The notes beneath the pieces are model-generated. The model made no database searches and was not told the DNA's origin. It worked only from the letters and a program-made list of their open reading frames with translations. The position numbers and the translations under genes were made by a program. Positions 27,201 to 53,987 of a DNA stretch of 64,000 nucleotides are shown one piece after another (position 1 is the stretch's first letter; every line of letters starts with the position of its first letter). Origin of the DNA: Glycera tridactyla (taxonomy: Eukaryota); contig OZ286473.1 in the NCBI GenBank assembly GCA_965644265.1, positions 22,382,001 through 22,446,000 on the forward strand, given 5' to 3'.

Positions 27201-30200
27201 TTTATAACTGGAATTCACTGACCTTGTTCCCAGCTCCTGAAATCATTGTACCCTGAGTACTTCCCACAGTAAGTGTTTAATGTGACAAAAAAATGACATC
27301 GTTAAGAAGATAATTGAACTCTCCAAATTATTGCAAATTGAAAACAGTTTTTCTCTCAATAATCACACAATCTTTCTGATGACATTCAGGTTTGATGCTT
27401 TTGTGTATTCATTGTCATCTTCAAGGTTTCAAGTCGCAGGTTTTGTTTTCAAGCTATATATCATTCCGCTTTCTTTTGCCATTATTGGCTTCTTTTGTGT
27501 GTAGCATTCGTTCAAGCACGCATGGCGAAATGAGCCGAATGGGAATTAAGAGTAATAGACCCGAATCAACTACAATAGAGCCATCTGGTGAGTTTTGGAG
27601 GTACCGATATACCGGAATCATCAGGCGTGGGCTTCTCTCTCCCGTTCACGACCTCTGCGTGACTTTCAGCTGTGCTTTTGGAGCGCCATCTGGCGGGGGT
27701 GACATCCATCAATGCTGCATGCTTGCTCAGTCGAACTAACTGTTTCACTTTTGACGGGCATAATTGTACAACTGGTTGCCATGGAAACCCGTAGGGTAGC
27801 AGTCGAGGTGAAAGATGTGCAGAGTTGTCAATGTGACCTTGAGGATATATCAGTATCAATTGGCTGATGTATATTATGGCATCTAGATTCATCGAGAACA
27901 CTATGAGAAATTGGTAAATCATATCAGAATTCGACTAATTTTGCAAGCAGGGCTTGACATCAAGGTTTTCGGCCAGCTGTGCATCTGGACAAGTAACATA
28001 GAATGATTGGTTATCCACCCTTGAAATTCACTTGTCCAACAAAATATTAGATATACTTTATGAAGAAAATAGCAGTTGTCCGGCGGACAAGTTGGTCAAA
28101 GAATTTACTTTTTTCCGCCATGGATTTCTACCTGTCCCGGACAAAGGGAACAATCCTTAATGTCAGGCCCTGGCAAGCAGAACTTTAGGTCAGCAATTGT
28201 CTTGACTGTTGCCACGTTGATGCACTATGTCTTCAAGGTCATGACAACTTTCCACGGGACTAGTACCCTAGTTTTTTTCTTTACAGGAACATTATATCAT
28301 TACTCTGGCTGTGGAGAAAAAAAAAATCATACTCGATTCCATATTTTTTATTTTTGTGTAACCTTTGCCTCCTGTACAGCATCCGATCTAGCTCAAAGAG
28401 CACCGTGAGCAAGTTAAGTTTGTCTAAGGAGCCAATATATCTGGCATCGGATGCGGCTGAATCGAGCCCCAGTGGTGAGTGAGCGTGCGGGAAATCGGGA
28501 GAATGGCATGAACACGCCATCGAGTTCACTAATATCTGCATGCTTCGCTCAAGAACACCCCAACACACACCGTAATCCAGCATGCTCATCGCTTATCATT
28601 GTATTGCCGACCTTCGCAGGTGTAGCACTAATGAGTACTGACCCCCCCCCCCCCCCCCCCATTAAATATGCTTCAAACAAAAATAGGTTCAGCTGTGTAT
28701 CAAATTGTTACAATCAATCAGTCTGAGGTGGGGCATAACTTTTAGTGTGTTCAGTTGCATGATGTTAACAAAATTCCTATTCATTCCCATGCCCAAGATG
28801 AAGAATATTCGGTAGAGATGCAGTGAATTTATTGAGGCATAAGTGTCAGCCCCCCACCAGATACATAGTTGCCGGGCACAGCATAGGGATATCCTCAAAT
28901 GCCCTTGGTCTCTGGCTGCAGATCAAACAATAATCTGAATATAATTTGCTAAAGGATGTTTGGGACGTAGCATTGAAGCAGTTATACTTTTTGAGAAGAT
29001 AAACAGTGTATCTGGTATTTTTCATTCAGATACAATTTACATGTACAGTAAAACCTGTCTTAAGTGAAAAGTCACGGGACCAAATTTTTCTTCCACTTAA
29101 GACAGGATTTGGCTTAGTGCAGGACAATTATAGTGCAGGCAGACAGTGGGGTATGTGCTTAAGACAGGATTTTGCCTAGCACAGGTTTACACTCAAGCAG
29201 GTTTCACTGTATCTCAGGACGTGGATCATTTCTAATTGAGTTGTAAGTTTTCACTAATGCTGATGAAATTTTTACCTTCCATTGGGGTGTCTGAAGAAGG
29301 AGTCTTGAAAGATTCCCCCATGACCATTGCACGGCATCACAATATAGCACATATGGTGCTGCAGTGATGTTAAACCAGAACCAACAACAATGGTGCCAAT
29401 TTTCCGAAAATTTTCGGAAATCCAAAAATTGGGTAAACAATATCAATTTCAGAAATTGCTAAAATCCGGTTGGGAGTTTCAGAACAAATATTTTGATGAC
29501 ATGTGGGGGTCTATTCAGAGATTGATTCCATATTTCTGAAAATTTGGCTTCATTTCATTGACATCACTGGAACAAACCCTTGGTCCTGCAAAGTACGTCT
29601 TGCGTAGAAGGTGGCAAGAGTAGATGATGCATAGCAATGTGTTTGTGTTGAGTGTTCGTGGGGAGCATGCAGGCCACCTTCATCCTCTGTAGGCTAATTA
29701 CTTTCCTCGGGTTAGTTATGTGCTCGTCTTTTCTTATTACCTTTTCTATATTCAGCTCACGACTTTTGAAGATCACTTATGGACTTATTAAGGCAATCAC
29801 TGTCCAATCAATGGGCAAAGAGACATACTTTCACCAGATCGATTAATTTGATGGGAAGTTCTGGTTCCAGCATTTATTGTAAGAGATAAAAGAAAACTCT
29901 TGACCAATCAGTCAATCAATCCACATCACAGACCTAAGGAGAATCTAGTTGCTGTATAGGAATTTTCATATACAGTGATGCCAATTCATCAGGAAGTTTC
30001 TGAATTCAGGAAACTTATCACCAGAATTGAATTCCAAAAGTTTTCCCAAATAGAATTAAAAGTGTAAAATCAGTAGCTTTTGGAAGTATATGGGGGTATT
30101 TTCAGGAAATTTTGCCAAAATTGCAGGAAATTCCACCAGTGCAGATGAATCTGGGTTATTGCTGTCTTGGGTACGGTTCATATGTGGTCTTCATCTTTCA

Positions 30201-33200
30201 AGTGTTTCCACTTTACATCTTCTCGAGTGCTCTAGAGTTTTTTTAACCACTAACCAGAACTTTGTACCTCTCCCATCTTCCATTCTGTATGTGTGTGTGT
30301 CTGCTAGCGTGAGGAGTAGCTCCGATGTGGACAAGCTAACCCTCAAGTCAAATAGCGCCCCTGATGATGAGACGGTGCATTTCTCCACCCCAACGGGAGG
30401 TATGGCGGGTAAGAATGGGTAAAGGCTGCCGCAGCTGCTGAATGGAACATTTTACATTAAAAAAGATGGCAAAGTCTAAGCCGCTTCTGTGATACAGGGC
30501 AGGAGTAGAAAACAACAGATTATCTCAACAGATCATGGGGATCGGTAGATTTCAATTTAGCCACCCATCCCAGAAAACCATCAGCCCTGTCAATTCTTGC
30601 AGAGTGATTATGATCATTTTTTGCATTCACCTTTTCGGCCTGTGCAATTTAAACCAGCCTATCCACTAGGAGAATTTTATTTCATGTGTAGAAAAGAACT
30701 TGGGTATGATAGTACCAGAGCTGTCACTCATTACAATTTTGGAGAATTAATCACCCTTTTTGAGCCAGATTTTTTTCGGCTTTTTACGCGCAGCATTTCT
30801 GCAAGAAATTTATGATCTAAAATTTTCATCATTGCAAACATACAACATACTGCTTTCATCACTTATGAAAATTGGCATCATTATTATTTTGCTCATCATA
30901 TGTCAGCTTCCCTGTAATACATGAAAATTTGCATCAGTTCATCAGCTAGTCTGAAGATCATTTATTTTTGCCATTGGGGCAGGTCTTAGTGTAGAGCCCT
31001 GTCCAGTGTTTTGAACTTTGCCAATTTATCGACCTCCAGAGGACCTAGTATATTACCGTGTATTTGATTTTGCCACTTCAGATGTAAAGTGGAACCATTT
31101 CAGGATGGCAGTATTGTGTTGTCACACTTGCTGACACACTCGTAGTGATCCGTCTATTGATATTCTACAAATTCCAGGTTGTGGCACATACTTCCTACAC
31201 ATTTCACAACCACCTGTTCCAACTCATGATGAAATAGCACCTCGTACATGAGCAATCCCTTGGTTGTTTTAATCTCATTTCTGGCTCGTCCACCATGTGA
31301 CTGGCTACTGTTCAATCCTATCAGATACTTTCAAAAATATCTGATATATTCCAAAAAGTTTACCTACATCTTACAGGGCTTGATGTTAAGGGTTGCCCTA
31401 TTTCCCGGGGCAAGTAAAATCTGTGTTCGGGCAAGTGAATTACCATCACTACTTGCCCAAAGGGCAAGTTCATTTCAGGGATAAGTGTATACATCAAATA
31501 AGTGGGGCAAGTACATTTGGTATTCAGGCAAGTTCATCTCAATGAGTACTTGCCCAAAGGGCAATTAAGCTGAAAACCTTAGTGTCAAGCCCTGTCTTAT
31601 TGGCATGACTCTACAGTTGAACCTGTATAAAGCAACCACCTGTCTCAAGCAGCTATGTTTGGACTTTTTGCCAGAGGCAACAACCCGTCTTTGAGCAAGT
31701 TCTCAGTTTCCCAACGGTGGTGGCCTCATACAAGTTCTACTGTGTATGAATCACTGAGTCACAGCACTTGGTCGACGTCAGAATGAGTAGCTCCTTATAT
31801 GCATGTAAGTGACACGTGATAGAGATAGATTTCGGTGGATGGCTTACCAAGGTATGGTGTCAATTGCCAAACTGTACAAGAAATGTCACCTAACCCTCAC
31901 TACCGGTGTCCTCAACAGTAAATTTTGCCAGGTGGACCTAAACCGAAATATCTCATGTCATTTACTCTAGTCATGTGTTTGTTGAGCATGGGAATGGTCA
32001 TGAATTATTGGTACATGTATTAAGGAATCTGTATTGAGCAACCACTGTAGTATCAAACAGCCACTTCCTGATTCTCTGCTGGATTATTTTTCTCCATTGG
32101 ATAGGTGGCCTCTGTAAGGAGGTGGTCTCACAAAGGTTTGACTGTAGATAAGACCAAGTCAGTTTGGCCTGAGATCAAGTCATTGTTTCGAGCCAACCTG
32201 CTGTCATGGGCGTACAGATGGGGCCACACTTTAGTATCATGGGGTACAGTGAGGGGCAAAGCTTCTGTGTCATGGGGTACAGATGGGGCCGATCTGCTTT
32301 CATGGGATACAGATGGGGCCAGGCTGCAGTAATGGTGTACAGATGGGGCCAGGCTGCAGTAATGGGATACAGATGGGGCCAGGCTGCAGTAATGGGGTAC
32401 AAATGGGGCCAGGCTGCAGTAATGGGATACAGATGGGGCCAGGCTACAGTAATGGGGTACAGATGGAGCCAGGCTGCAGTAATGGGGTACAGATGGGGCC
32501 AGGCTGCAGTAATGGGGTACAGATGGGGCCAGGCTGCAGTAATGTGATACAGATGGGGCCAGGCTGCAGTAATGAGGTACAGATGGGGCCAGGCTGCAGT
32601 AATGGTGTACAGATGGGGCCAGGCTGCAGTAATGGGATACAGATGGGGCCAGGCTGCAGTAATGGGGTACAAATGGGGCCAGGCTGCAGTAATGGGATAC
32701 AGATGGGGCCAGGCTACAGTAATGGGGTACAGATGGAGCCAGGCTGCAGTAATGGGGTACAGATGGGGCCAGGCTGCAGTAATGGGGTACAGATGGGGCC
32801 AGGCTGCAGTAATGTGATACAGATGGGGCCAGGCTGCAGTAATGTGATACAGATGGGGCCAGGCTGCAGTAATGGGGTACAGATGGGGTCCAAATTGCTG
32901 TCATGGGGTACAGATGGGGCCAGGCTGCAGTAATGGGGTACAGATGGGGCCAGGCTACAGTAATGAGATACAGATGGGGCCAGGCTGCAGTAATGGGATA
33001 CAGATGGGGTCCAAATTGCTGTCATGGGATACAGATGGGGTCCAAATTGTTGTCATGGGGTACAGATGGGTGCCAGACTGCTGTCATGGGGTACAGATGG
33101 GGCCAAGCTGCAGTAATGGGATACAGATGAGGCCAGGCTGCAGTAATGGGGTACAGATGGGGTCCAAATTGCTGTCATTGGGTACAGATGGGGCCAGGCT

Positions 33201-36200
33201 GCAGTAATGGGATACAGATGGCAGTCTGCGAAGTTAGCCACTAGCCCGAAGCCCGGGGCTAGAAGAAATCGAATCGGGCTACCAATACAAGCCAAGATGG
33301 TAGCACGACCGGGCTAGTAATAATTTTGGGGAACTATCGGTAATATAACGCTTTATTCCATGTGAAAATCCGTCTTTATTGTGCAGAAAAACGTGATCCG
33401 TGGGCGCCACCATCTTGGTATTCTCGTGGGGCTAGATGATCGTGCCCGAGAGAGATGACGATCGCAGTTCGCCAATTTTGCGACAGATGGCGGTGTTTCG
33501 ATTGCGAGCCGCAGCGCCACACTGTGGCGTGAATCGGGACTATCGAACTCGTCAAATTTGCGATAGATGGCGGGGTTCGAGATGCGAGTTACACTGCACA
33601 ACACGTGCATTCATGGTGATAATCGGAACCAGCTCGCGCCTTTTTCAATGAGTGAAAACAACTGAGATTTGTTGAAAGGAATCTTCACAAGGCTTTACAA
33701 GAAAACACTGCCTAGTGTCAGCATAGGTTAATTTCACCTCCCACCCTCCCCCTCATTCTACACCCACCCTCCCCCTCACTCAACACCCGCCCTCCCCCTC
33801 ACTCAACACCCAATCTCACCCCCACCCAACACCACACTCACCACCATGTTGATCAACAGTCAGTCAGTCAACACTCAGTTAGTTGATCAACACTCAATCA
33901 GTCAGTCAGTCAACAGTTAAGTCACTCAAGCCCCCCCCCCCCCCCCCCCCCCATACTGAGATGACTGCATTTTATGTATCTTCGCGGGGATTCGCTATTT
34001 TATTTCATCCTGTGTTCATCAGTCCATGGATTGGTGATTCTTGCAAAGCTGTTTCACCGAAAACAGGAGCAAAACAATAGGCCCCTGGGCCTTCAAATAG
34101 TTCGGGCTAGTAAATTGGTGTTCGGGCTAGTAGAACTGCCCATCTACTAGCCCGACCGGGCTAGTGCTGCCATTTTTTTTGGCACAGACTGAGATGGGGC
34201 CAGGTTACAGTAATATGATACAGATGGGGCCAGGCTGCAGTAATGGGGTACTGATGGGTCCAGGCTGCAGTAATGGGATACAGATGGGGTCCAAATTGCT
34301 GCCATGGGGTACAGATGGGGTCCAAATTGCTGTCATGGGGTACAGATGGTTGCCAGACTGCTGTCATGGGGTACAGATGGGGCCAAGCTGCTGTCATGGA
34401 GCACAGATATCACCAAAAATGCTGTCATTGGTTGCAGATGGGCCTAGCTGCTATTATGGGGTACAGATGGGGCCAAGCTGCTGTCGCGGGGTAAAGATGG
34501 GGCCAAAATGCTGCCATGGGTTACAGATGGGGTCTAGCAGCTGTTATGACGTTGGGCCATGCTGACGTGTTATTTGGCACATATAGGGCCAAGTTTCTGT
34601 GTCATTGTTTACATTTCGAACACTGTATCGTTAGGAGATATGAGATTCGTGTCATGTGGTCTTCATTAGAGTTACCTCTTAATTTGGTGTGACTCAGCCG
34701 TACTTTCATGAGACATTTTGACTGTGAATTCTTTTAATTGCACCCAACATTTAGTCAGACAATATTCAAGACATTGGAGAATTTTCCTTTGACATGTTAT
34801 GGCAGATTAATCCTCTGATAAAATGTTCCAACATGGATGAGAACAAAAAATTGTATGAGGTATGGACAACGTTTGTTGACCGAGCCAGATTGTGATTTCG
34901 GTCACCCAAAACATGTTGTTCTATGATTTTTTCAGATTCTGCCCAACTTGTACCTTCCGACGAAACTGGTATAGACCATCTCTCCACATTGATTTCCCCG
35001 ACTTACTCTTGTGCCTTCTCTAATACTGCACAACTGCATGTCTGTTTTGCTTTCTTCCTGCTCTATCTGTCGTTTTGTCTAACTTCCTGTGTGACCTAGG
35101 TCATAAGTCGGCATTAGCCAGGGTTTGTACAGGACTTGAAAACTCTTTGTACTTGGATGGACTCTTTGAAAAGTCCTTCAATTTGTGAAGTTGGTACAGT
35201 CCTTTAAAAGTAGTGAAATACTATTTTACATTGAATTGTCATAGTCAACATACAAATAGAATGAAGTGACTGACATTTGAATGTCAAGAAATGCACAATC
35301 TATCCAAGTTGCTTCATTTGAACGGCAAATGAGTTTGGTATCTGAATGTTGAATTATGATAGATTAAGTATTCTACTCTCTCTCTGCTTTCTGTGAGGAA
35401 ATTGTCACATATTGACATTCATATTTTTTCTTGAGAAAATTTTGCAACTCCTTGATAAGTCCTTGAATTTGAGGGCAGCGGAAGAGTACGAACCCTGATT
35501 AGCATTTGTATTCATGTGTGTCCTAATCTTTTTTTGAGCATGACAATTGCATTATTGAGTCCATAGTCGGATTAGTCATCCTCTAGAATTGGGAATGTGA
35601 CGGCAGCAAGGCCCCGCGTTGTGTGGGACAGTTTCTGTGACGTTAGGCGCGTATGGCTCTAGGGTTTTGTGTCAAGTCTGTGTTGCGCGATTGCATGAAA
35701 GCATCGCTTGTATTAGATGCTGCATGCATCTATGTGATGTTGGCATGTGCTAATTTATGATGAGTTTACCTTATTCTGTGGCATGCAATTTTTGGCTGCA
35801 GATGTGTGAGCTTCCTCGGCCAAATGAAAATGCTTAAACCGTTTGTTATCTGACTGATGACTAATGCTCTGAGTTTATTTATTTATAAAGAAATATTTTG
35901 GCTGGACGAATACATTGGTTGCTCAAGACAGGATCTCTCTTAGTATAGGCCATGCTTAAGGGGATTTTGATTTCTTCTCGTTATTTCATCTCAGGTGGAG
36001 GTCCTCATAACTCATAGTTCCTTGTACAGTCGAACCTGTCTATAAAGACCGCCTTCGGTCGCATCAAAATTTACTGTTGAAAATACTACCTGGTCTTTAT
36101 AGAGAGGTGGTCTTTAGAGCAGGTTCGACTGTACATATATATGTAGGATATCAGTTCCAAGTACCATCATAGCTGCAAAAATGATACCACCTTGATAGTA

Positions 36201-39200
36201 TAGCTTTCCTTCTTGTTCCATGGATGCAAAGTGCATGCTTTTGGAGATTGTTGAATGGCAACTAGTTCCGAGGAAATTTCAGTAAAATCTGCAGTGAGAG
36301 ACTGCTTTGATTAGCACCCAAACTAGACTTTTCGAGAGAAAAAAAGTGGTCACGCGTTCTAGGTATATTTGACTATGTCAATTAGGAGGACTGTCCTGTG
36401 AAGGTCATCTTAGACAGAGATATTCTCTCGTCACAGGTTTCACTGTATATTCATGTTTCTTTTTTTTGCTAACTGTTTTTGAGTCGTTGGCTGTTCAATT
36501 GTTACTTTGCCATCCCTTCATGAAATGTCATTTTTGATATTTCAGGGCAACTCATGGGTAGGTCACGCATGAGTGATTGCTCATCAACTGCTAACCATAT
36601 GTGAGCAGTTTCAGTGCTCATTGAGCAACTTATACACTATTTTCCTCAAAATAAGTAATCAAAGTAATTCAAATAGTTCATAAGTGAGGTTTTTTAAGTA
36701 CCATTAACATTTAGACCTGCAATTGTCCTGTGTCATGATGAACTTGCCTGGATATGTCATCCAAGATGGCTGCCAAGGGCAAACCCCCAAATCTAGGTCA
36801 TCTTTCATGATGTTATCACAGGTGACCTGATTGCGTCATTTTTGACTCGATTACAATGACCAACCAATGTCAATCATAACACATGCAGAGGTATGATTTT
36901 CCTGATGATCATTCCCTTCTCTGGATCCTAATCAAAAGTTTAGTGTAAAAAGCTGAAAAAATTGGATGATTTCTGAATTTCTCTTTTGGTCAGTCATATT
37001 CAAGTGCATGGGTTCTCTGATGAATAAACTATTGTCATGTGTTATACAGTCAAACCTGCTTGAGAGATCACATTCATTCAAAAACTACCTGCCTACGGAA
37101 ACCATGAGGGCATTGACTCTAATAGTATTTTCAACGGTAAATGGGTCTGATTGGGTGTCATATTGCATAAAATCTACTAGGATGATTCCAAACCGATTTA
37201 TGATGAATACAAAATTTGCTTACCCGGTACTTTGGATCACATGTAACATTGCTTGCAACATCACATGATCAAGACTCCTAGGCGGAGTCGAAAAGTCGTC
37301 AAAATCGTTTCAACAATCGTTCCAAAGTAAGCGAAGATGATGTTTCAGTGCCCTTAGTGCCTGTGACATTAATTGCAGTCTAACCTATCCTAAACAGCCA
37401 CTGAACTAAGCAGCCACTTCTAAATTTATGACCGGTGGTTCTTACTATAATTCACCTGCCGTTTCAGCAGCCACTTTTTGCCCTGCCCCAGGTGGATAAA
37501 TGCCATCAAAGTCATACTAAACCAAAGCAGAGTGGCTGTTTAGAACACCATGCTCCAATGCCCATATATTACCGGGAGAGATGAGTAGTACAGTGGAACC
37601 TGTGACAAGAGATTACTCTAAATGTCAGTAAAAAAGAGATGCATAAAAAGGTGATTTCTCAACAGAGGTACTGTCAAACATTCTAAAGACCACCTCGCTA
37701 TAAAGGCCACCCTGAGCTGTGCCTGTGGTAGTATTTTCAACAGTGAATTACCTCTCTATAAAGACCACCCTATGAAGGCCACTTTTTGATTCGACTTAAG
37801 GGGGTCTTTTTAGAAAGGTTCGACTGTATTACCAGGAGAGATGAGTAGTACAGTGAAACCTGTGACAAGATATCTTACTAAATGTCAGTAAAAAAAAAGT
37901 CACCCAGAAAGGTGATCTCTTAACAAAGGTATATTTGATTATGGTATGTCAAATAGAAAAGCTGACCTGAAGAATTGGTCTCCCATTGAAGGTGGTCTCT
38001 CATAGCAGGTATCACTGTACCTTTATATAGGCAAGTTAAGGGGGTGAAGATAAGGGTACAGCATGTTAAGGTCAATATAAATTATAAGGGAGGTCTCACA
38101 TCAGATATGACGGCTAACATTCAACCTTCGGGTTTGCTCTCTGATGTTTTGATGTATTTTTCCTGCTCCGATTTGTTCTGTCACTGCTGGCATTGGTGAT
38201 TGCAGAAGAAGCGATCGTGATGCGCGGTCCATCCGATCAGAACGGCAGCGTCTTCATCAGTATGTTACTGTACATGCATATTATCAGTTACTCAACGTTA
38301 GAATTCTGAAACCAGATCCAGGGACTCGATCGCACCCGCCAGAAACCTTGCCAGTCATCAGTGAATCTTGGGATAGTTTTCTTGAAACTTCAGTCTTTGG
38401 ACTTAGTACATTGAGATTTTGATGAGTTTTAAGGAAAAACGCTCGATGAAGTACATGTATGTGCATCAATAAAATCAATATGACCATTCCTCAAGAAAGG
38501 ATTGAGTTGTGATTTTAGTTTTACGGGCAAAAATTCTGTGTTGAAAGTCATGGTTCGAGCTGTTGTTTTCTCTTGGAAAAACAAATTTGATTTCGATATG
38601 TGTTGGATCACCGAAACATGGCTAGCTTCTACCTTGGCTATATTTCTTGGGTAGCACACTGTACTGGTATATCCTGGGAGTGCTGCTATTGTCTTTAATG
38701 ATATCTCACCATTGGAAATTCACATTCATAAATTCATCCCGTATCAGAGGCTTGTAGTAATATGTCATGTGAATCAATACTTGGTAAAATACTGATGAAT
38801 AGATGTTCGGCTGAACAGTGTTCATGCATTATCCCGGACTTGAAAGTGGCCCAAAATCTGGATCAGACTTGTGAAAGAAATTTCCCTGGATTTGAAAAAT
38901 ATACTTTGCCATTCTCAGGAAGCCTCAAATATCTTATCAACCTCCCGGTAGGTCCTGAAAATTGGGTTTGTCGAGTCCTATGATTCCGAGAAAAAAATTG
39001 ATTAATTGCAACCTAAAAGCCAGTTGTGAGATGTGGTTATTCCTGTTGTCATGAATATTAATCTCTTAATTAGGTATTGGCTCAGAATTCTAACATTCGT
39101 CTTCCGTTTAGTGTGGATAGTCGTAATTTTGGTGTCTTTTCCTTTAATTGTCCCCCGCAGGAACACCGGAAGGGGGACTATAAAATAGTGGGCGTCTGTC

Positions 39201-42200
39201 CGTCTGTCCGTCCGTCCGTCCGTCCGTCCGTCCGTGCGTCCCTTGTCCGTCCGGTGTCCGTCCGGTGTCTGTCCGCGCACGCCAACTTTGCGGAACCTGT
39301 ATCTCTGGAACCGCTGCACCGATTCACACCAAATCAAGTTTCCTGGAAGCGTCTTGATGTGTAGGTGTGCACTGGCATGTTTATTCTGAATTTGGGCATG
39401 TGATAGCCTGCCCACGGGCAGGTGAAATGTGAAAAACTTCAGGATGTCATCAGGATTTTGCGGAACTCATATCTCCACCATGGCTGCACCGATTCACACC
39501 AAATCAAGTTTTCTGGAAGCGTCTTGATGTGTAGGTGTGCACTGGCACGTTTATTCTGAATTTTGGCATGTGATTGCCTGCCCACGGGCAGGTGAAATGT
39601 TAAAAACTTCAGGATGTCATCAGGATTTTGCGGAACTCATATCTCCACTATGGCTGCACCGATTCACACCATATCAAGTTTCCTGGAAGCGTCTTGATGT
39701 GTAGGTGTGCACTGGCATGTTTATTCTGAATTTGGGCATGTGATAGCCTGCCCACGGGCAGGTGTAATGTGAAAAACTTCAGGATGTCATCAGGATTTTG
39801 CGGAACTCATATCTCCACCATGGCTGCACCGATTCACACCAAATCAAGTTTTCTGGAAGCGTCTTGATGTGTAGGTGTGCACTGGCACGTTTATTCTGGA
39901 ATTGGGCATGTGATAGCCTGTCCACGGGCAGGTGAAATGTGAAAAACTTCAGGATGTCATCAAGATTTTGCTGAATTCATATCGATTCACACCAACTCAA
40001 GTTTCCTAGAAGTGCCGTGATGTGTAGGTGTGCACTGGCCCATTTATTCTGGCTTCTGCCATGTGATGGGCTGCCCATGGGCAGGTGAAATGTCTGAATG
40101 CTAGGCACTCCCATCCACACTTTGCAGAACTCATATCTCCACAACCGCTCCACCGATTCACACAAAATAAAGTTTTCCTGAAGCGTCCTGATGTGTAGGT
40201 ATGCACTGGCAGATTTATTACAGATTTGTACATGCAATGGGCTGCACATGGGCAGTTGAAATATCTGAAGGACTTCAATATGGCATGCACTCTTATTTGG
40301 ACTTAATGGAACTCATCTCTCTAAAACGGCTTCACCGATCCACATCGAATGAACTTTCCCTGAAGTGTCTTGATGTGTAGCTGTGCACTGACATCTTTAT
40401 CATGGGTTTGGGCAAGTGATGGGTAGCATAGGCTGCCCATTGACATTTAAAATGGTCGATGGTATGGACTTATGGGAACCCATGTAGTGTGGACTGCTGC
40501 ACCAATCCACACTGAATCAACCTTTCTGGAAGCATCTTCTTGATGGTATGCGCTGTGCAGAACCCATGCATTCAAAACAAATGCACTGATTCATACCAAA
40601 TCATATCTTATTGATCTTTCTCATTGTTCATATGTGCACTGGCACATTTATTCTGAGCTTGGGCAAGTGCTGTGCTGCCCATGGGCATACTTGAAACACT
40701 CCATAATGGCATGCACATTGTCGACCCCATATGAAGAAAACCAACACATTTTTTCTGCGCAGTTCAAGAAGCAGAGGTGCTCACTGTCATAGTCCCACAT
40801 CGGCGGGGGACCCCGCATCACTGATGCCTTGTTTGTTGTACTTGAGTGCCTCGTCATTGGTATTCGACGCACGATTCTCACTGATCTTCCTATATCATCT
40901 ACACGGAGAACATCCCGTGCTCATTTGTGCTCATTTGTTTCATTTGTGTGCCATAATCAGAGGTGCCAACTGTTATGATTTTGGATTAGTAAATACTCTT
41001 TTCAAGCCAAAATTTTGGCATTTTACTCATGATATTACTAAGATAAATAGAAATCGTTATCATTTTTGGTCATCAAAGGCTGGCATCCCTGTCTAAAGTG
41101 AAACCTGCGAGGAGAGACCACACTTGATGTCACTGAAAAGTGGTCTCCCAAAGAGGCAGTCTCTCATCGGAGGTATTATTCGACAATGTCAAGTAGAAAA
41201 GCTGTCCTGCAAAAGCGGTCTCCCGTCAGAGGTGGTCTATCGTCACAGGTTTCACTGTAATTGATAAATAGGTAACAACAATAATAATAATGGAAACATA
41301 TTTGTGCAAGGATAATCAATATTGTGTAATTATATATGTATTTTAATTTGAGAATTGAACAAATACTGGGACATCTGATGAGGGTTGATATAGCATCTTC
41401 AAATGCTCAAGATAGAGTCTACCTTTGCCTGGCAGAAAACAGTTATCGGTCAGAATCAAGTCTCCATTTTTATGGAATTGGTTTCTGGAATTCCCAGAAT
41501 TACCTCAGTTGCTCTCTAGATTCTATCAACTGTGTGAGGTTGATAGCTGCATTGATAACGATTGAAGTTTGGTTCGTTGTATTCTGCTTGAAATATTAGC
41601 TTTTATCAAGTCACAGTTCCACATATGACTTGCCATTTGAATGTTCATGGGCAGTGCCCTCACTATGTTTACAACACTTGACAGGGCTCTATGCTAGGGT
41701 TGCCCTACTGGCACAGGCAGGTGGATTTGTTGATAGTATATCTGAGCAGAAAAGCCACTCCAAAAAACAGCCTCTCATCATAGGTGGTCTCTCGTTGGGG
41801 TTATTGTTGCAGGTTCTACTGTATTGTATGAAGAAATTAATCAAATAACTGGAAAGTTGATCATAACGATCGTAACATTGTGGCTAGAAGCTCTAGCTTT
41901 CGACAGAAAATGAACTCTTGTAGCAGTCACATTCTACTGTATTGATTATGGGCCCAACACTACTGTGAAAGCTGCACACCCTTGAGTTCACCCAAAAGCA
42001 TCGGATGTCTTTCTGCAGGTTTTATTGTACAGTATTGATTATTGACTCACCACTACTACATAGATCACTTTTATTATGTTCATGTTGTGTAGTTAGAGGT
42101 GTGTCTGAACTGTCAGCTACAGTGAAACCTGCGAAGAGAGACCGCCCTAAATGCTACCAAAAGGCGGTCTCTCAAAAGAGGTGGTCTCTCGTCGGAGGTA

Positions 42201-45200
42201 AATTTGACTATGTCAAATAGAAAAGCTGCCCTGGAAAAGCGGTCTCCAGTCGGAGGTGGTCTATCATCGGGGGTCTCGCGTCGCAGGTTCCACTGTACTT
42301 CCACTTGACAGCCATTCAGGTTCCCCATCATCTTGTGTTTGGGGTTTGTGAGAGTGATGTCTGCAGGGGAGAGAAGATCTAGCTCTCATTGACCAGGGAC
42401 ACACGGCATACATACACCTTTCGGTTGATACATGCCGTTAACCATCGACCAATCAATCAATCACTTTCCAAGCTTCTGTTTCAATGGTGGAGAGTTGACC
42501 GCTTGACATCCAGTCAGCATAAGTACACAGATATACTGACCACACGGATAAATGGCCATGGTTGTATGCGGTCAAACCTGCACCAGAGACCACCCCTATA
42601 CAAAGACCACCCTGGCCAGTGACAGCTGTAGTATTTTCATCTTCGAAAATTGGACTACCTGCAGGTGGTTGCTTTAGAGAGGTGATGTTCAGTGAAAATA
42701 CTGTCATAGTCAGTATGTTCAGTGGTCTTTGCAGACTGGGGGTCTCATTTATATGAGTTTGGCTGGTAATACAGTCGAACCTCCTCTGAAGACCTCCTCT
42801 CTATAAAGACCACCCTGAGCTGCGGCCGTGGTAGAATTTTCAACAGGAAATGACCTCCCTATAGAAACCACCTCCCTATGAAGGCCACTTTTTTATGCGA
42901 CCGGAAGCGGTCTTTATAGAGAGGTTCAACTGTACTGCCATAGTCATTATGTTCAGTGATCTTTGCAGACAGGCGGTCTATCCACAGAGAATAGAAGGCA
43001 TTTATATGAGTTTGGCTGGTTATGTATTCCCAATACACAGCCTGACACTTGTAGACACTTAGGTAACAATGTTGGTGATTTTGGATATGTTTCCATAGCA
43101 ACCAGATCTTGATAGCATTGATGGATGGCACCAGATTCCCAGTTACACTCTACTTGCTCATGTCTATTTATTTTTGCCTCTGTCTCCATGTAGCTTTTTA
43201 TATTATTGTACCAAAATGCACGGGTGGTGGTGAAGATGAATGTTTCACAATACGCACAATTTATGTATTTCTTTTTCTGTGAAAAATCTGTTGTGATTCC
43301 TAATATGCCTTCTTGCTTATTCATTCAATAATCAATTGTGGGGACCATCTACCCCCGTTTTTTTTTTTTTGCAACTCCATAATGCAGTCTGAAAATTACC
43401 ATAATCGCCTTGAAAAAGATCCGATGTCAAGAACAAAATACCCATGCTTTAGCAAGCTTCAGTTCCCCCTGTGATGGCAACTCTTTTGTGGTACCCAGCT
43501 TTGCAAATCTGCTCCCATTTCTTTATCGAGGTCATCGCAAATGTAAGTTCTTAGGTTTGCATGTTTACATGGTTTCTATATACAGCCTCATGAACCCTTT
43601 GAAACCTTGGAAATGCCCTTGCATTTGAAAACTGCAATTTCAACTCTAGAAAAGCCTATCAATTTGATTCACATCCCTGGTTAATGCCACAGTTTCCCTA
43701 TTTGCCGCAGAAAATTCATTGTAAATGAATATCAAGATGATATCATGTGTCATAGCAAGAAGTGTTTTCTTCATGAATTGGCAGAGGAAAGGTGTGGGCG
43801 ATGAAGAAGTTCTAGGTGGGCTTACGAAGACTTCTATAGCAAAAAAACTCTGGTATCAACGCTCGATACCTCAAATATCCTTGAGAATGATAAATATGGA
43901 ATATTTGAGCACAGCAGCTGCACCTTATTTTCTGATGAATACGAACCTATCTCATGTTATTCACCCTATTCATTTAGCTGAATTCAAGTTTGATATTTAA
44001 GAGTGTTCAAACCCATATCTCTTGTCATGAAACTGTCTCCCAATGTAGCACTTGAATGAATCTTTTGGTTAGCCTCATAGTTGCTATTCAAGTACAAGCT
44101 TAGGCAAGTCGTCACTTTGTACCTGTAATTATGGATGAAAAACTGTCCGACAAATCAACAAACTGGCTTCAGATGAAGTTCCTGTACTGGCCATCATAGT
44201 TCTGTATTCGTTTTTCTTCTACATTGTGAGCTTGATGAAATGTTTTGCTTCAAATTTGGAGGTAACGAATAGATACATGTATAGCTGATTATAATGAGAT
44301 CATCTGCAGTTATTCCATACAAAACATCCTTCAATTTTTGATCAGTTATCAACTTGCATGATCGATTGATCGAATTGGACCTCTTAACAAGGCAATAATC
44401 GATATAATCAGGTAATCTTCAAAGCACTACAGTGCCTTTATTGCGCTGTAATTTCCTTTAATTAGATGATTTTGGGATTTGTATCTCCAAAAACTGCGCT
44501 TTACACAGGTTTTCAGTGTTTTGTGGACAAATCACATTCCTGAGCTATACAGTCAAACCTGTCTATAAAGGCCACCTTCGGTCGCTTTAAAAAGTAGCCT
44601 TGATAGGCAGGTGGCCTTCACGGAGAGGTAATTTCCTGTTGGAAATACTATCATGGTCACAGCTCAGGATGACCCTGAAAGAGAAGTGGTCTCTCAAGTA
44701 GGTCCGACTGCACAGTCAAACCTCTCCAAAAAGATTGCATAAAAAAGTGGCCTTTGTAGACAGGTGTTATTTATAGAGAGGTCATTTCCTTTCAGAAAAT
44801 ACTATCATGGTCACAGCTTAGAGTGGCCTTTATAGGCAGGTGGTCTTTATAAAGAGGTGGTCTATCGAGCAGGTGCGACTGTACTTGTTTTCATCCTCTA
44901 TAAAGATCGCATCAAAGCGTGACCTTTATAGGCAGGTGGCCAACTGTTGAAAATACTACCACAGTCATCAGCTCAGGATGGCCTTCATTTAGGCAGGTGG
45001 ACTTCATAAAGAGGTGGTCTCTCGAGCAGGTTCGACTACTTGTTTTCATCATGCTAGCGTGATCTCTTAACGCTGATGTTGTTGATTTCCGATGTTGTAG
45101 GAGATGACAAAGATGCGGAGGGACAGAATGTGTGGGATAACGAGGAGGAAGGCGTCGCCTACAGCTACAGCTTCTTCCACTTCATGTTTGCTCTCGCTTC

Positions 45201-46299
45201 TCTCTACGTCATGATGACCCTCACCAACTGGTTCAAGTAAGTGTGTGTGGGGAAGGGGGGAGGNNNNNNNNNNNNNNNNNNNNNNNNNNNNNNNNNNNNN
45301 NNNNNNNNNNNNNNNNNNNNNNNNNNNNNNNNNNNNNNNNNNNNNNNNNNNNNNNNNNNNNNNNNNNNNNNNNNNNNNNNNNNNNNNNNNNNNNNNNNNN
45401 NNNNNNNNNNNNNNNNNNNNNNNNNNNNNNNNNNNNNNNNNNNNNNNNNNNNNNNNNNNNNNNNNNNNNNNNNNNNNNNNNNNNNNNTATTTAGGAGCCA
45501 GCTGTTGATATTTCTGGTAGCAGCTGGCAAATGTTGGGAGCTAGTAAATACATTGCCAATTACAAACTCTGCGGTTTGCTCACTAACCTTCAGAGTATGG
45601 TAGGTAGCCAGAGGGTAAATTTGGCAGCCATTTTCTACCCACNNNNNNNNNNNNNNNNNNNNNNNNNNNNNNNNNNNNNNNNNNNNNNNNNNNNNNNNNN
45701 NNNNNNNNNNNNNNNNNNNNNNNNNNNNNNNNNNNNNNNNNNNNNNNNNNNNNNNNNNNNNNNNNNNNNNNNNNNNNCAGAGGACATGGGTCAGACACCC
45801 ATAAGAAACACAATGTTGCCATGAAAAGTGTGTGTGTGTGGGGGGGGGGGGGAGAATGTGAGTTTGTATGAATTTTGTGGGATGTGGGTATGTATTGATG
45901 AACAGTCAAACCTGTTCCAAGCAGGCAAAAAGCGGCTGCTCAGAGCAGCTGAATTATAGTGGAGGAACCTCTGATGGGAAATTCAAAAGTGGCTGCTTAG
46001 GACAGGTGGCTGCTTAGGACAGGTTAGACTGTAATTCTTCATTACACAATGTTCATGTCTCGATGCGAGAGGTTCATGAAGAGTTGTGAAATCATATGGC
46101 GCTTAGATTCACCTTTAGCGATGAATCAAACTCAAAAATCGATATGAATTTGAATTGCAGGCCAAGCAGTGACCTGCAGACCATGACTGCAAACGAGCCG
46201 GCGATGTGGGTGAAGATCTCGTCCAGCTGGGCCTGTATCGCCATCTACATGTGGACCCTCATCGCGCCAGTCGTGCTCAGCGACCGTGACTTCGATTAA
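8439..46299 (+). CDS. SERINC: SERINC/TMS1 family serine incorporator (lipid scramblase-like multi-pass membrane protein), complete multi-exon gene: 9 constitutive 5' exons, one of 4 mutually exclusive exons, 2 constitutive 3' exons; about 457-463 aa
   Basis: Exons splice with consistent phases into one ORF: 1016 nt + 83 + 136 + 139 = 1374 nt, i.e. 457 aa plus stop. It carries hallmark SERINC motifs: [81 protein letters not shown] and a C-terminal RDFD*. The paralogue (SERINC1/3-like) cannot be assigned. Confidence 0.97.
8699..8775. repeat. 27-bp tandem repeat x3 in SERINC intron 1
   Basis: ggtgttgaatatacacctgtcaYactg at 8701, 8728 and 8755. Confidence 0.9.
10352..10516 (+). CDS. SERINC: SERINC exon 2 ([55 protein letters not shown])
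   Basis: tttttatttggcag acceptor, GTAAGT donor, 165 nt, Cys-rich SERINC N-terminal motif. Confidence 0.96.
10948..11141 (+). CDS. SERINC: SERINC exon 3 (IPGLCKG...[13 protein letters not shown]...[10 protein letters not shown])
   Basis: tttatttccag acceptor, GTAAGC donor, 194 nt, ends in phase 2. Confidence 0.96.
11147..11367. mobile_element. MITE of the CAGGGCTTGAC family (5-bp TSD); other copies at 14978-15191, 27948-28172, 31374-31594
   Basis: TIR cagggcttgac/gtcaagccctg. TSDs: ATCAT (14978), GCAAG (27948), TCTTA (31374), GTAAG/ATAAG (this copy). Confidence 0.82.
12016..12095 (+). CDS. SERINC: SERINC exon 4 ([26 protein letters not shown])
   Basis: ttcag acceptor, GTAAGT donor, 80 nt, phase 2 to 1. 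Confidence 0.96.
12225..12731. mobile_element. hAT-like MITE with 6-bp TSD; related copy at 35119-35497
   Basis: TIR cagggttc(a/g)tac / gtacgaac(a/c)ctg; TSD GCAGGT here and ATTAGC at 35119. Confidence 0.8.
16610..16747 (+). CDS. SERINC: SERINC exon 5 ([45 protein letters not shown])
   Basis: tttttatag acceptor, GTGAGT donor, 138 nt, phase 1 to 1. Confidence 0.97.
17210..17295 (+). CDS. SERINC: SERINC exon 6 ([28 protein letters not shown])
   Basis: tttttgcag acceptor, GTGAGT donor, 86 nt, phase 1 to 0, TM helix. Confidence 0.95.
18077..18173 (+). CDS. SERINC: SERINC exon 7 ([32 protein letters not shown])
   Basis: ttgcag acceptor, GTGAGA donor, 97 nt, phase 0 to 1. Confidence 0.96.
19312..19398 (+). 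CDS. SERINC: SERINC exon 8 ([28 protein letters not shown])
   Basis: ttgcag acceptor, GTAAGT donor, 87 nt, phase 1 to 1. Confidence 0.96.
19622..20855. mobile_element. PIF/Harbinger-like non-autonomous element with a CpG-rich core
   Basis: TIR gggctattccattta / taaatggaatagccc, TAA TSD on both sides, C-rich subterminal repeats. Confidence 0.8.
21276..21411 (+). CDS. SERINC: SERINC exon 9 ([11 protein letters not shown]...[19 protein letters not shown]), ends phase 2
   Basis: ttcag acceptor, GTAGGT donor, 136 nt. Confidence 0.96.
22869..23461. mobile_element. MITE with TIR (t/c)agggctgccaa and 6-bp TSD ATGGTA
   Basis: atggta|tagggctgccaa...ttggcagccctg|atggta. Confidence 0.82.
25221..25336. 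mobile_element. Tc1/mariner-like MITE (TA TSD, TIR CAGTCGAACC); abundant family with relatives at about 217-480, 10713-10874, 15768-15945, 19088, 36027-36131, 37590-37830, 42120-42296, 42772-42932, 44550-45040, 50963-51140
   Basis: ta|cagtcgaacc...ggttcgactg|ta with internal agaggtggtctttata repeats. Confidence 0.82.
25732..25814 (+). CDS. SERINC: SERINC mutually exclusive exon 10A ([27 protein letters not shown])
   Basis: tttgcccttgaag acceptor, GTGAGT donor, 83 nt, phase 2 to 1. Closest to the vertebrate IRTSNNSQVNKLTL segment as I recall it. Confidence 0.9.
26715..26891 (+). mobile_element. Tc1/mariner-like MITE; inverted near-identical copy at 29046-29209
   Basis: ta|cagtgaaacctg...caggtttcactg|ta; the reverse complement of 29046-29209 aligns along nearly its whole length. 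Confidence 0.85.
27505..27587 (+). CDS. SERINC: SERINC mutually exclusive exon 10B ([27 protein letters not shown])
   Basis: ttcttttgtgtgtag acceptor, GTGAGT donor, 83 nt, phase 2 to 1. Confidence 0.87.
28380..28474 (+). CDS. SERINC: SERINC mutually exclusive exon 10C ([31 protein letters not shown])
   Basis: cctttgcctcctgtacag acceptor, GTGAGT donor, 95 nt, phase 2 to 1. Confidence 0.88.
30308..30399 (+). CDS. SERINC: SERINC mutually exclusive exon 10D ([30 protein letters not shown]); alternative end at 30408
   Basis: ACTAAC branch-like motif near 30249, pyrimidine tract, ctgctag acceptor. Donor GTATGG at 30400 or GTAAGA at 30409. 92 or 101 nt, phase 2 to 1. Confidence 0.86.
32270..34560. 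repeat. 30-bp GC-rich minisatellite (gggtacagatggggccaggctgcagtaatg)n, split by the 33222-34191 insertion
   Basis: About 30 copies to the left of the insertion and a more degenerate block at 34192-34560. Confidence 0.95.
33222..34191. mobile_element. 970-bp DNA-transposon derivative inserted in the minisatellite, 6-bp TSD AGATGG
   Basis: agatgg|cagtctgcg...cacagactg|agatgg; subterminal cgggctag repeats. Confidence 0.8.
34936..34968 (+). CDS. Candidate SERINC cassette exon, 33 nt ((D)[10 protein letters not shown])
   Basis: gattttttcag acceptor, open in the phase-1 frame, length 3n; the GTATAG donor is weak. Confidence 0.4.
36546..36557 (+). CDS. Candidate SERINC 12-nt micro-exon ((G)QLM)
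   Basis: tttttgatatttcag|GGCAACTCATGG|gtaggt; phase 1 to 1; upstream GCTAAC and a U-rich tract. Confidence 0.55.
37282..37326 (+). CDS. Candidate SERINC cassette exon, 45 nt ((G)[14 protein letters not shown])
   Basis: ctcctag acceptor with a weak pyrimidine tract, GTAAGC donor, phase 1 to 1, open, Ser/Lys-rich and CpG-rich like the real exons. Confidence 0.5.
38206..38259 (+). CDS. Candidate SERINC cassette exon, 54 nt ([17 protein letters not shown])
   Basis: About 100-nt AG-free zone with GCTAAC near 38110, tgcag acceptor, GTATGT donor, phase 1 to 1, C-ending codons like the constitutive exons. Confidence 0.68.
39148..40815 (+). mobile_element. Helentron-associated (HINE / DINE-1 / pearl-like) element containing 170-bp tandem repeats
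   Basis: 5' gtccccc...gggggactata hairpin/subTIR, (CCGT)n microsatellite, core repeats at 39314/39484/39654/39824 (period 170) then degenerate copies, 3' atagtccc...gggggac hairpin. Confidence 0.75.
45101..45236 (+). CDS. SERINC: SERINC exon 11 ([45 protein letters not shown])
   Basis: gttgtag acceptor, GTAAGT donor, 136 nt, phase 1 to 2. Confidence 0.97.
46161..46299 (+). CDS. SERINC: SERINC last coding exon ([45 protein letters not shown])
   Basis: ttgcag acceptor, TAA stop, canonical SERINC C-terminus. Confidence 0.97.
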
Positions 46300-53559: not shown

Positions 53560-53911
53560 TATGTCAATCAGCGGCCCTGCACGGGAAATTTCCTCCTTTG
53601 AGCTTCAACCTAGTTCTTGGTTTATCCAGTTTAGTACCTGCTTAACAGATCGATGCCTTTCACGAGATTCGTGGCAGATGTGTGCCGTAGTGGACCTTCA
53701 TCTGAACAAACATGTAGAAAAATGTTTCACAGCCTTCCTTGTTTGTTCTTTGTGTAATACCCAGTCAGTGATGCATTTCACCAAAATAATGATGCACCGA
53801 AGAAAGACACCGGCTGCACCAACACCACATAGCTACAGACTGCCATGGTCAATAGGGATGTTTGGAGAAGGATCATTAAAGGCATCCGAGCTGCAGACCC
53901 TGCCTCGACCA

Positions 53912-53987
<76 letters not shown>

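What the first reader, a model, noticed from the sequence alone, without database searches (positions are those of the whole stretch)
34936..38259. Second tier: run of frame-preserving phase-1 cassette/micro-exons downstream of the MXE array
Seen: four AG...GT segments in the 14.7-kb intron before exon 11 are open in the phase-1 frame with 3n lengths. They are 34936-34968 (33 nt, [10 protein letters not shown]), 36546-36557 (12 nt, QLM), 37282-37326 (45 nt, [14 protein letters not shown]) and 38206-38259 (54 nt, [17 protein letters not shown]). No junction among them, with any MXE, or with exon 11 creates a stop. Inference: ICL4 is assembled combinatorially, up to 4 x 2^4 = 64 loop variants as a theoretical ceiling, and more with the alternative donors. 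The individual exons range from likely (54 nt) to weak (33 nt).
Basis: partly seen in the sequence, partly recalled or inferred. Interest (0 to 1): 0.75.

Follow-up and report, generated by a model that had tools for sequence, protein, structure and literature searches.

The report
One probable extra exon in worm SERINC
Of four proposed small optional exons in a worm's SERINC membrane-protein gene, the 54-base one looks like a genuine coding piece matching a small exon that oysters and leeches carry at the same spot; two are no better than chance and one is a jumping-gene fragment.

Summary
The four AG...GT, 3n, phase-1-open segments are at the stated coordinates. That criterion means little alone: the 14.7-kb intron (30409-45100) holds 949 such segments. 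The splice-site scores of the 12-nt and 33-nt candidates equal what the reverse complement of the same intron yields.

- **45-nt candidate:** it lies in a dispersed repeat with over 1000 first-look copies, often in inverted pairs (MITE-like), and has a competing AG 6 nt upstream. Rejected.
- **54-nt candidate (38206-38259):**
  - It is unique in the genome.
  - A 99-nt AG-free zone precedes it, in the top 0.7% of intron AGs.
  - It is coding-like only in the required frame, and only between its AG and GT.
  - It starts with EEAIVM, which matches a motif that other SERINCs carry at this loop position. The score is 14.2 bits, the only 8-mer in six frames of the intron to reach it.
- **Precedent:** oyster (21 and 15 nt), leech (18 nt) and Dimorphilus (36 nt) have phase-1 small exons in the homologous intron. 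Only the oyster's differ between annotated isoforms.

No usable RNA was found, so inclusion or skipping is untested, and the 64-variant scheme is unsupported. The scan noted the upstream exon array before (s1-340386), not these segments.

The parts
38206..38259 (+). Candidate 4: 54-nt phase-1 exon encoding (E)[17 protein letters not shown]. Probably a real exon for SERINC intracellular loop 4. Three in-frame tandem acceptors (CAG|AAG|AAG) allow starts at 38206, 38209 or 38212.
   Evidence: Unique in the genome. The AG-free zone before the acceptor is 99 nt, top 0.7% of 865 intron AGs. Codon log-likelihood is 11.9 bits in the required frame against 0.7 and -5.1 in the other + frames, and the signal is confined between the AG and the GT. 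It holds 7 CpG in 54 nt, top 1% of intron windows. A motif matrix built from six other taxa scores it 14.2 bits, 1 of 19,528 8-mers, with the next best at 8.4. It is the top locus against 133 SERINC loops.
38105..38205 (+). Upstream region of candidate 4: a long AG-free zone with a pyrimidine-rich stretch about 15-50 nt before the AG, and three TGC triplets, one of them directly before the AG.
   Evidence: plus direct reading of the sequence.
34936..34968 (+). Candidate 1: 33 nt encoding (D)[10 protein letters not shown]. Unproven and at chance level.
   Evidence: Unique in the genome. AG-free zone 45 nt. Splice score 3.47, which controls match. Codon log-likelihood -5.5. The micro-exon matrix gives only 2.5 bits against 9-16 for real ones. 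A loose 4-residue pattern, chosen after seeing the data, is shared with other phyla's micro-exon.
36546..36557 (+). Candidate 2: 12 nt encoding (G)QLM. Unproven and at chance level.
   Evidence: Unique flanks. It has the best crude splice score in the intron (6.3), but the reverse complement of the intron also yields one score of 6.3 or more. AG-free zone 60 nt. It is too short for composition or homology tests.
37282..37326 (+). Candidate 3: 45 nt inside a dispersed repeat. Rejected.
   Evidence: Window 37248-37335 matches at least 1014 first-look places in the genome at 85-95% identity, several in close inverted pairs. Run contigs cross both putative splice sites in many unrelated contexts. 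A competing AG lies 6 nt upstream. Codon log-likelihood -11.3.
37248..37335 (.). Copy of a MITE-like repeat, probably a terminal inverted repeat, that contains candidate 3.
30308..30408 (+). Exon 10D, last of the mutually exclusive array. It leaves phase 1 (final G) at the donor after 30408; an alternative in-phase donor follows 30399.
   Evidence: Exons 10A-10C also end ...G|GTGAGT.
45101..45237 (+). Exon 11, 137 nt, entered in phase 1 (Pfam Serinc positions 348-392).
30409..45100 (+). The 14.7-kb intron holding the candidates. It is rich in repeats: 30-bp minisatellites, SINE-like and MITE-like copies, and a 170-bp tandem array.

Best explanation
The window carries a SERINC (serine incorporator) gene. 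In the long intron between its four-way mutually exclusive exon 10 array and exon 11, one of the four proposed segments, 38206-38259 (54 nt), is a genuine coding exon for the cytosolic loop ICL4.

It adds about 18 residues that begin with an acidic-hydrophobic motif (EEAIVM) followed by a polar stretch (GPSDQNGS). It is the counterpart of the small phase-1 exon that other protostomes carry in the same intron. By analogy with annotated oyster isoforms (checked on the genome) and decapod isoforms (protein level only), it is probably included in some transcripts and skipped in others. That would add or remove one short linear motif in the loop.

The other three segments are not supported. The 33-nt and 12-nt ones are what chance gives in 14.7 kb. 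The 45-nt one is part of a transposon-like repeat.

Shown: anatomy, phase, uniqueness, composition, motif match, and precedent in other genomes. Inferred: that the exon is spliced in at all, that inclusion is optional, and any effect on trafficking.
For: - **Host gene:** it is SERINC, with six exon matches to PF03348 in the window, up to 67 bits.
- **Phase:** exons 10A-D end in phase 1 and exon 11 starts in phase 1.
- **Candidate 4, anatomy:**
  - single copy in the 2.04-Gb genome
  - 99-nt AG-free zone before its acceptor, top 0.7%; real acceptors of this gene have 29-48 nt
- **Candidate 4, composition:**
  - codon usage trained on this gene's other exons gives 11.9 bits in the required frame and 0.7 and -5.1 in the other + frames
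  - positive codons stop at the AG and at the GT
  - CpG peak in the top 1% of intron windows
- **Candidate 4, homology:**
  - a matrix built only from the motif at the same loop position in six other taxa scores it 14.2 bits
  - the training sequences score 15.6-18.2, it is the only 8-mer of 19,528 in six frames of the intron to reach 14.2, and the next best is 8.4
  - it is the best locus among 783 decoys against 133 SERINC loops, with PSDQNGS matching PSDQNDS in P0094
- **Precedent on genomes:**
  - Oyster L011 has 21-nt (GDAPLVD) and 15-nt (ADSYR) phase-1 exons between exons 10 and 11. Isoforms P0158, P0164 and P0188 carry the first, the second or neither.
  - Leech L015 has an 18-nt exon, NLIINQ.
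  - Dimorphilus L016 has a 36-nt exon.
- **Precedent at protein level only:** decapod RefSeq isoforms differ by an 18-residue insert at the same site.
Against: - **No RNA evidence:** the only runs found (X1-X4) are contigs of unknown kind that cover just the repeats. They give zero depth on candidates 1 and 4, and no positive control was possible.
- **Species absent from other collections:** metagenome scans for candidate 4 and for exon 11 were both empty.
- **No close relative's genome was available,** so nucleotide conservation is untested.
- **The motif matrix was defined after I had noticed the resemblance.**
- **The codon score alone is weak.** About 11 non-SERINC clusters on 128 kb of strand in this window reach it, and the antisense frame of candidate 4 scores 10.8, though it contains a stop.
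- **The closest full-length relatives lack the motif.** The loops of P0178 and P0217 do not contain it, and the worm's loop is already of normal length without any extra exon.
- **Ungapped BLOSUM scoring is not significant.** Against distant micro-exons, candidate 4 ranks 85 of 670.
- **The polypyrimidine tract next to the AG is poor** (acceptor score -3.0).
Confidence: 0.65

Rival explanations
1. None of the four segments is an exon. The intron is spliced out whole, and the 54-nt segment is a chance island of GC- and CpG-rich sequence.
For: There are 949 segments of the same formal kind. Control sequences give equal splice scores. No RNA coverage was seen. The codon score is reached by about 11 other clusters in the window. 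The loop is complete without extra exons.
Against: Four partly independent features coincide on one 54-nt stretch: the required frame, the AG-free zone, the motif at the right loop position, and uniqueness. Three other protostome genomes have a small exon in this intron.
Confidence: 0.2
2. One reading: all four segments are independent cassette exons, used combinatorially with the exon 10 array to give dozens of loop variants.
For: All are frame-preserving and no junction gives a stop. The oyster has two alternative micro-exons in this intron.
Against: The 45-nt segment is a repeat copy with a competing AG 6 nt upstream. The 12-nt and 33-nt segments do not exceed controls. The 33-nt one has negative coding potential and a weak motif score.
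Confidence: 0.04
3. The 54-nt segment is a real exon but is constitutive, always included, so there is no second tier of alternative splicing.
For: The leech and Dimorphilus gene models, and several transcript-derived SERINCs (P0208, P0152, nematodes), include the homologous piece. It scores well as coding sequence.
Against: Annotated oyster and decapod isoforms differ by this piece. The long AG-free zone, the weak tract near the AG and the tandem acceptors are, from general knowledge, commoner at regulated exons. That is inference, not a test.
Confidence: 0.25
4. The 54-nt segment is a decaying relic of a former exon, or of a fifth exon 10 copy, that is no longer spliced.
For: It has a weak polypyrimidine tract at the AG and no RNA support.
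Against: It shows no DNA similarity to exons 10A-D or exon 11 beyond shuffled controls. The frame, AG, GT and CpGs are intact in a CpG-depleted intron with observed/expected 0.44.
Confidence: 0.07

Closest known systems
Alternative micro-exons of oyster SERINC (Crassostrea virginica isoforms X1/X2, X3 and a shorter X3; proteins P0158, P0157, P0164, P0188; locus L011)
   Same: Same intron (exon 10 to exon 11). Same phase 1, lengths a multiple of three, and canonical AG/GT. The product is inserted at the same point of ICL4. The 21-nt exon encodes an acidic-hydrophobic piece, GDAPLVD, comparable with EEAIVM.
   Different: The oyster exons are 21 and 15 nt and lie 0.15 and 0.9 kb after exon 10. 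Here the supported exon is 54 nt and lies 7.8 kb after the last exon 10 copy. The oyster has a single exon 10, not an array. Sequence similarity is limited to a short motif and is not significant by ungapped scoring.
Leech (Helobdella robusta) 18-nt exon NLIINQ and Dimorphilus gyrociliatus 36-nt exon DDGYDLDGQDDK in the same SERINC intron
   Same: Both are annelids, with the same intron, phase 1 and 3n length.
   Different: Each is present in the single annotated model, so alternative use is not documented. The sequences are not alignable with the 54-nt segment beyond their acidic and hydrophobic character.
18-residue insert in decapod SERINC isoforms (Penaeus, Eriocheir, Macrobrachium, Palaemon; for example P0308 against P0290)
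   Same: Same loop position and the same size, 18 residues or 54 nt. It contains a D-I-P-L-V hydrophobic core flanked by polar residues.
   Different: Seen only at protein level here; the genomic look-ups failed. The hydrophobic core sits in the middle of the insert, not at its start.
ICL4 of human SERINC5 and SERINC3
   Same: It is the same long cytosolic loop. In human SERINC5 it carries hydrophobic residues (L350, I352), an acidic cluster (EDTEE) and a regulated serine (S360). These govern Nef sensitivity and stability (PMC11788155). Nef binds ICL4 (PMC10359404).
   Different: No micro-exon at this position was found described for vertebrate SERINCs. The known human isoforms differ elsewhere (from my own knowledge). 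Any functional equivalence of the worm motif is inference.
MITE-type non-autonomous DNA transposons (for the 45-nt candidate)
   Same: A short unit, hundreds to thousands of dispersed copies at 85-95% identity, with copies in close inverted pairs.
   Different: Target-site duplications and the full element were not delimited here.

Membership tests
SERINC / TMS1 family (Pfam PF03348), host gene | Match to the Serinc profile along the protein | tested here: met
   Six exon-wise matches in the window cover profile positions 1-434, up to 67 bits against a cut-off of 24.
Cassette (optional) exon | Canonical AG and GT borders, frame-preserving length, no stop in the frame set by the neighbouring exons | tested here: met
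   All four meet it, but 949 segments in the intron also do.
Cassette (optional) exon | Transcripts both with and without the exon | not testable with these tools
   The only runs found are contigs of unknown kind that cover repeats alone. Metagenome scans were empty.
Cassette (optional) exon | Signals above intronic background (coding potential, acceptor context) | tested here: inconclusive
   Met for the 54-nt segment. Not met for the 45-nt segment. The 33-nt and 12-nt segments do not exceed controls.
Conserved protostome SERINC small exon of ICL4 (oyster, leech, Dimorphilus) | Lies in the intron between the exon 10 equivalent and the exon 11 equivalent, phase 1, 3n | tested here: met
Conserved protostome SERINC small exon of ICL4 (oyster, leech, Dimorphilus) | Encodes the acidic-hydrophobic motif found at that loop position in other taxa | tested here: met
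   The 54-nt segment scores 14.2 bits, unique in the intron. The 33-nt segment scores only 2.5 bits on the bivalve, decapod and leech version of the motif, so it is not met for that one. The matrices were defined after seeing the data.
MITE-like repeat (45-nt candidate) | Many dispersed near-identical short copies, with inverted pairing | tested here: met
   At least 1014 first-look places and 52 scored matches at 85-95% identity, with several inverted pairs within 100-300 bp. Contigs from unrelated contexts cross it.
MITE-like repeat (45-nt candidate) | Target-site duplication and defined element ends | not tested
   Not delimited.
Neural micro-exon of the SRRM4/eMIC-regulated kind | Length of at most about 27-51 nt, a UGC motif close to the 3' splice site, neural inclusion | tested here: inconclusive
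   The 54-nt segment is just over the usual length limit. TGC occurs directly before the AG and at about -21 and -44 (direct reading), which is common by chance. Tissue pattern is not testable.

The most novel reading that the evidence does not exclude
SERINC genes across protostomes (annelids, molluscs, arthropods) share an ancient, optionally included small exon. It inserts an acidic-hydrophobic, dileucine-like motif into ICL4, the loop that in human SERINC5 controls adaptor- and Nef-dependent removal from the membrane. In this worm it would act as a second switch layered on a four-way mutually exclusive exon array. The cell could then tune trafficking or turnover of a lipid scramblase by splicing.
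Probability: 0.3. Interest if true: 0.6.

Novelty: new member of a known kind. Interest (0 to 1): 0.4.

Why it matters
ICL4 is the part of SERINC proteins through which viral antagonists and host kinases control their surface level in humans (PMC11788155, PMC10359404). Little is known about how the loop is used in ordinary cell biology.

A small exon that adds or removes an acidic-hydrophobic motif in that loop would point to an old, splicing-based control of SERINC trafficking. Gene models of molluscs, crustaceans and annelids already show such an exon, yet two full-text searches found no description of it.

For genome annotation, the practical points are these:
- The 54-nt exon should be looked for in transcript data.
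- The three other segments should not enter gene models without reads.

Tried and rejected
- **RNA evidence:**
  - Laying them on 34600-39150 showed only multi-copy repeats, with zero depth on candidates 1 and 4.
  - No second call was available for a control on exon 11, so this is uninformative rather than negative.
- **Metagenome scans:** exact-match scans with 30-mers of candidate 4 and of exon 11 both returned nothing.
- **Paralogous copies:** the own genome holds no second copy of candidate 4.
- **Similarity of candidates 1 and 4 to mollusc and decapod micro-exons:** it looked good by eye, but ungapped BLOSUM scoring ranks them 85 and 91 of 670 decoys. Candidate sets from the oyster, Owenia, leech and Dimorphilus introns give nothing either.
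- **A better-scoring match to the bivalve/decapod/leech motif (41721-41786, KQPLIIG, 11.7 bits):** it abuts a repeat with over 1000 copies and is within chance expectation. Rejected.
- **Candidate 4 as a relic of an exon 10 copy:** there is no DNA similarity beyond shuffled controls.
- **Decapod loci:** they could not be fetched because those isoforms are not on record.
- **P0094 and P0208:** both are metatranscriptome mRNAs, so they give no exon structure.
- **Rfam:** no RNA family in the window.
- Exons were searched one by one by reference. In scripts, only the single base or residue needed to complete a split codon was supplied.
- **Third large protein search:** not used.
Full report
**Setting**

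The window is G000:C39:22382001-22446000 of a 2.04-Gb genome that earlier notes take for an annelid. It carries a SERINC gene on the + strand. Exon-wise matches to Pfam PF03348 fall at these window coordinates:
- 10355-10543
- 10936-11145
- 16582-16749
- 19314-19472
- 45109-45243
- 46165-46287

An earlier finding of this scan (s1-340386) described four mutually exclusive copies of exon 10 at 25732-30408. I confirmed their ends. Exons 10A, 10B and 10C end ...G|GTGAGT. Exon 10D ends ...G|GTAAGA at 30408, with an in-phase alternative donor after 30399. Exon 11 is 45101-45237 and begins with two bases that complete a codon.

**The observation**

The four segments are exactly as described. Being AG-bounded, GT-followed, a multiple of three and open in one given frame is very common, however. 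The intron holds 949 such segments of 9-150 nt.

It serves only for ranking against controls. The ranks were:

| Segment | Rank of 949 |
|---|---|
| 12 nt | 1 |
| 33 nt | 8 |
| 45 nt | 36 |
| 54 nt | 107 |

The reverse complement of the same intron gives one segment as good as the 12-nt one and four as good as the 33-nt one. Other parts of the window behave alike.

**Candidate 3 (37282-37326)**

It lies inside a dispersed repeat. Window 37248-37335 has at least 1014 first-look matches in the genome, with 52 scored at 85-95% identity. Several are in close inverted pairs, as expected for the terminal repeats of a MITE. Contigs of the public runs cross both putative splice sites in many unrelated contexts. 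An AG lies 6 nt before its acceptor, and its coding score is strongly negative. I reject it.

**Candidates 1 and 2 (34936-34968 and 36546-36557)**

Both lie in single-copy sequence. Their AG-free zones are 45 and 60 nt, similar to real acceptors of the gene, which have 29-48 nt.

Candidate 1 has a negative codon score. By eye, [12 protein letters not shown] resembles the bivalve micro-exon (DAQLID, DAPLVD), and only 3 of about 300 loci carry a loose 4-residue pattern. A weighted matrix built from nine groups of other taxa gives it just 2.5 bits, against 9-16 for the real ones.

Candidate 2 is too short to test. I put candidate 1 at about 0.15-0.2 and candidate 2 at about 0.1.

**Candidate 4 (38206-38259)**

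- **It is single-copy**.
- **Its acceptor context is unusual.** The acceptor is preceded by 99 nt without any AG, in the top 0.7% of the 865 AGs of the intron. A pyrimidine-rich stretch lies further upstream.
- **It is coding-like only in the required frame.**
  - Codon usage trained on the gene's other exons gives 11.9 bits over 17 codons in the frame required by phase 1.
  - The other two + frames give 0.7 and -5.1 bits.
  - The run of positive codons starts at the AG and ends at the GT.
- **This score alone would not suffice.**
  - About 11 non-SERINC clusters on the 128 kb of strand in the window reach it.
  - The antisense frame scores 10.8, though it contains a stop.
- **It is a CpG peak.** It holds 7 CpG in 54 nt, top 1% of windows, in an intron with CpG observed/expected 0.44.
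- **Its product matches a known loop motif.**
  - It begins with EEAIVM.
  - SERINC proteins of six other taxa carry EEALVL, EETLIM, REAIVN, RAIVS, DEAMLG or TEAILL. Each sits at the same place in the loop, between the conserved SEKTIL-type motif and the acidic stretch before DNEEEGVAY.
  - A matrix built from those six alone scores candidate 4 at 14.2 bits, while its own training sequences score 15.6-18.2.
  - Candidate 4 is the only one of 19,528 8-mers in all six frames of the intron to reach 14.2 bits. The next best is 8.4.
- **It is the best locus against SERINC loops.** In a search of 783 decoy peptides against 133 SERINC loops it comes first, through PSDQNGS matching PSDQNDS in P0094.

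The matrix was defined after I had noticed the resemblance, which inflates its weight. The other lines of evidence do not depend on it.

**Precedent**

Comparing loop sequences of some 330 SERINC proteins showed that annotated isoforms of molluscs and decapods differ by short inserts at exactly this point. I checked three genomes.

| Species and locus | Exon 10 ends | Small exon(s) | Exon 11 starts |
|---|---|---|---|
| Crassostrea virginica, L011 | 9024 | 21 nt at 9170-9190 (GDAPLVD); 15 nt at 9967-9981 (ADSYR) | 12839 |
| Helobdella, L015 | 4789 | 18 nt at 5343-5360 (NLIINQ) | about 6251 |
| Dimorphilus, L016 | 3262 | 36 nt at 3712-3747 | about 3892 |

All of these small exons are phase 1. 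The oyster isoforms P0158, P0164 and P0188 contain the first micro-exon, the second, or neither.

So a small frame-preserving exon in this intron is an established feature of protostome SERINC gene models. Two full-text searches found no paper describing it.

**What it probably does**

ICL4 is the loop through which HIV-1 Nef acts on human SERINC5 and SERINC3. In SERINC5 it holds hydrophobic residues L350 and I352, an acidic cluster and a regulated serine, all of which affect stability and removal from the membrane (PMC11788155, PMC10359404).

The worm exon would add an acidic-hydrophobic piece and a serine-rich polar piece to that loop. The most likely role is to add or remove a short linear motif for an adaptor or kinase, and so change trafficking or turnover. 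This is inference from analogy; nothing here tests it.

Whether the exon is optional or constitutive in this worm is open. I estimate about 60:40 for optional. That rests on the oyster and decapod isoforms, and on the long AG-free zone, weak proximal tract and three tandem acceptors (CAG|AAG|AAG).

**RNA**

The only runs offered (X1-X4) are Logan contigs of about 80 Mb each, of unknown kind. On 34600-39150 they cover only high-copy repeats, with depth in the tens of thousands at 35968-36271 and 37640-37791. Candidates 1 and 4 have zero depth.

That pattern fits low-coverage DNA as well as RNA, and I had no second call for a control on exon 11. It therefore says nothing either way. Metagenome scans for candidate 4 and for exon 11 were both empty.

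**Limits kept**

- The N stretches were left as they are.
Exons were searched singly by reference, and only the single base or residue completing a split codon was supplied in scripts.

**Verdict**

This is one probable new exon, with probability about 0.7-0.8 that it is real. It belongs to a kind already present in relatives' gene models.

Noticed in passing
G000:C26:102777700-102791830 (locus L017 covers 102776000-102785999): A second SERINC gene on another contig holds a tandem array with a 106-bp unit. There are at least 78 copies in 10 kb at 94% identity, and Pfam hits continue for about 14 kb. Read on the gene's strand, each unit is the 3' 100 nt of the exon 11 equivalent (...[33 protein letters not shown]) plus the first 6 nt of its intron (GTAAGT). 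It is an exon-derived satellite inside a gene.
   Followed up: partly
window 38204-38212: Three in-frame tandem acceptors (CAG|AAG|AAG) stand at the start of the 54-nt segment. They could give products differing by one or two residues (E, EE).
   Followed up: no
window 32198-33221 and 34219-34548: 30-bp minisatellites (34 and about 10 copies, 87% and 77% matches) lie inside the intron. They are open in several frames on both strands, giving long spurious ORFs.
   Followed up: no
window 35968-36271, 37640-37830, 37945-38003: Copies of very abundant short interspersed elements (core ...GGTGGTCTTTATAGAG...). Summed contig depth reaches 20,000-56,000 in runs X1-X4, and copies occur in both orientations within this intron.
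   Followed up: partly
window 39313-40262: A 170-bp tandem repeat (5.7 copies, 85% matches), preceded by a (CGTC)n simple repeat at 39193-39275.
   Followed up: no
L016 2429-3261 (Dimorphilus gyrociliatus, protein P0247): The annotated model strings three exon-10-like exons in series (SLRSTSKAGRMSL..., SLRSSGHSQAGKLTL..., ...LDKLTMTT...), giving a 551-residue protein. This looks like a mutually exclusive exon array annotated as consecutive exons.
   Followed up: no
window 53879-54010: A long GAT/GAC (poly-Asp on +, poly-His/Ser on -) triplet repeat that scores as coding on both strands.
   Followed up: no
window 34587-34658: A phase-1, 3n segment whose peptide (..[13 protein letters not shown]..) gives the best ungapped score of the intron against the decapod insert TNRRSLGDIPLVT (27). 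The rest of the peptide is hydrophobic and Cys-rich. I took it for chance.
   Followed up: no
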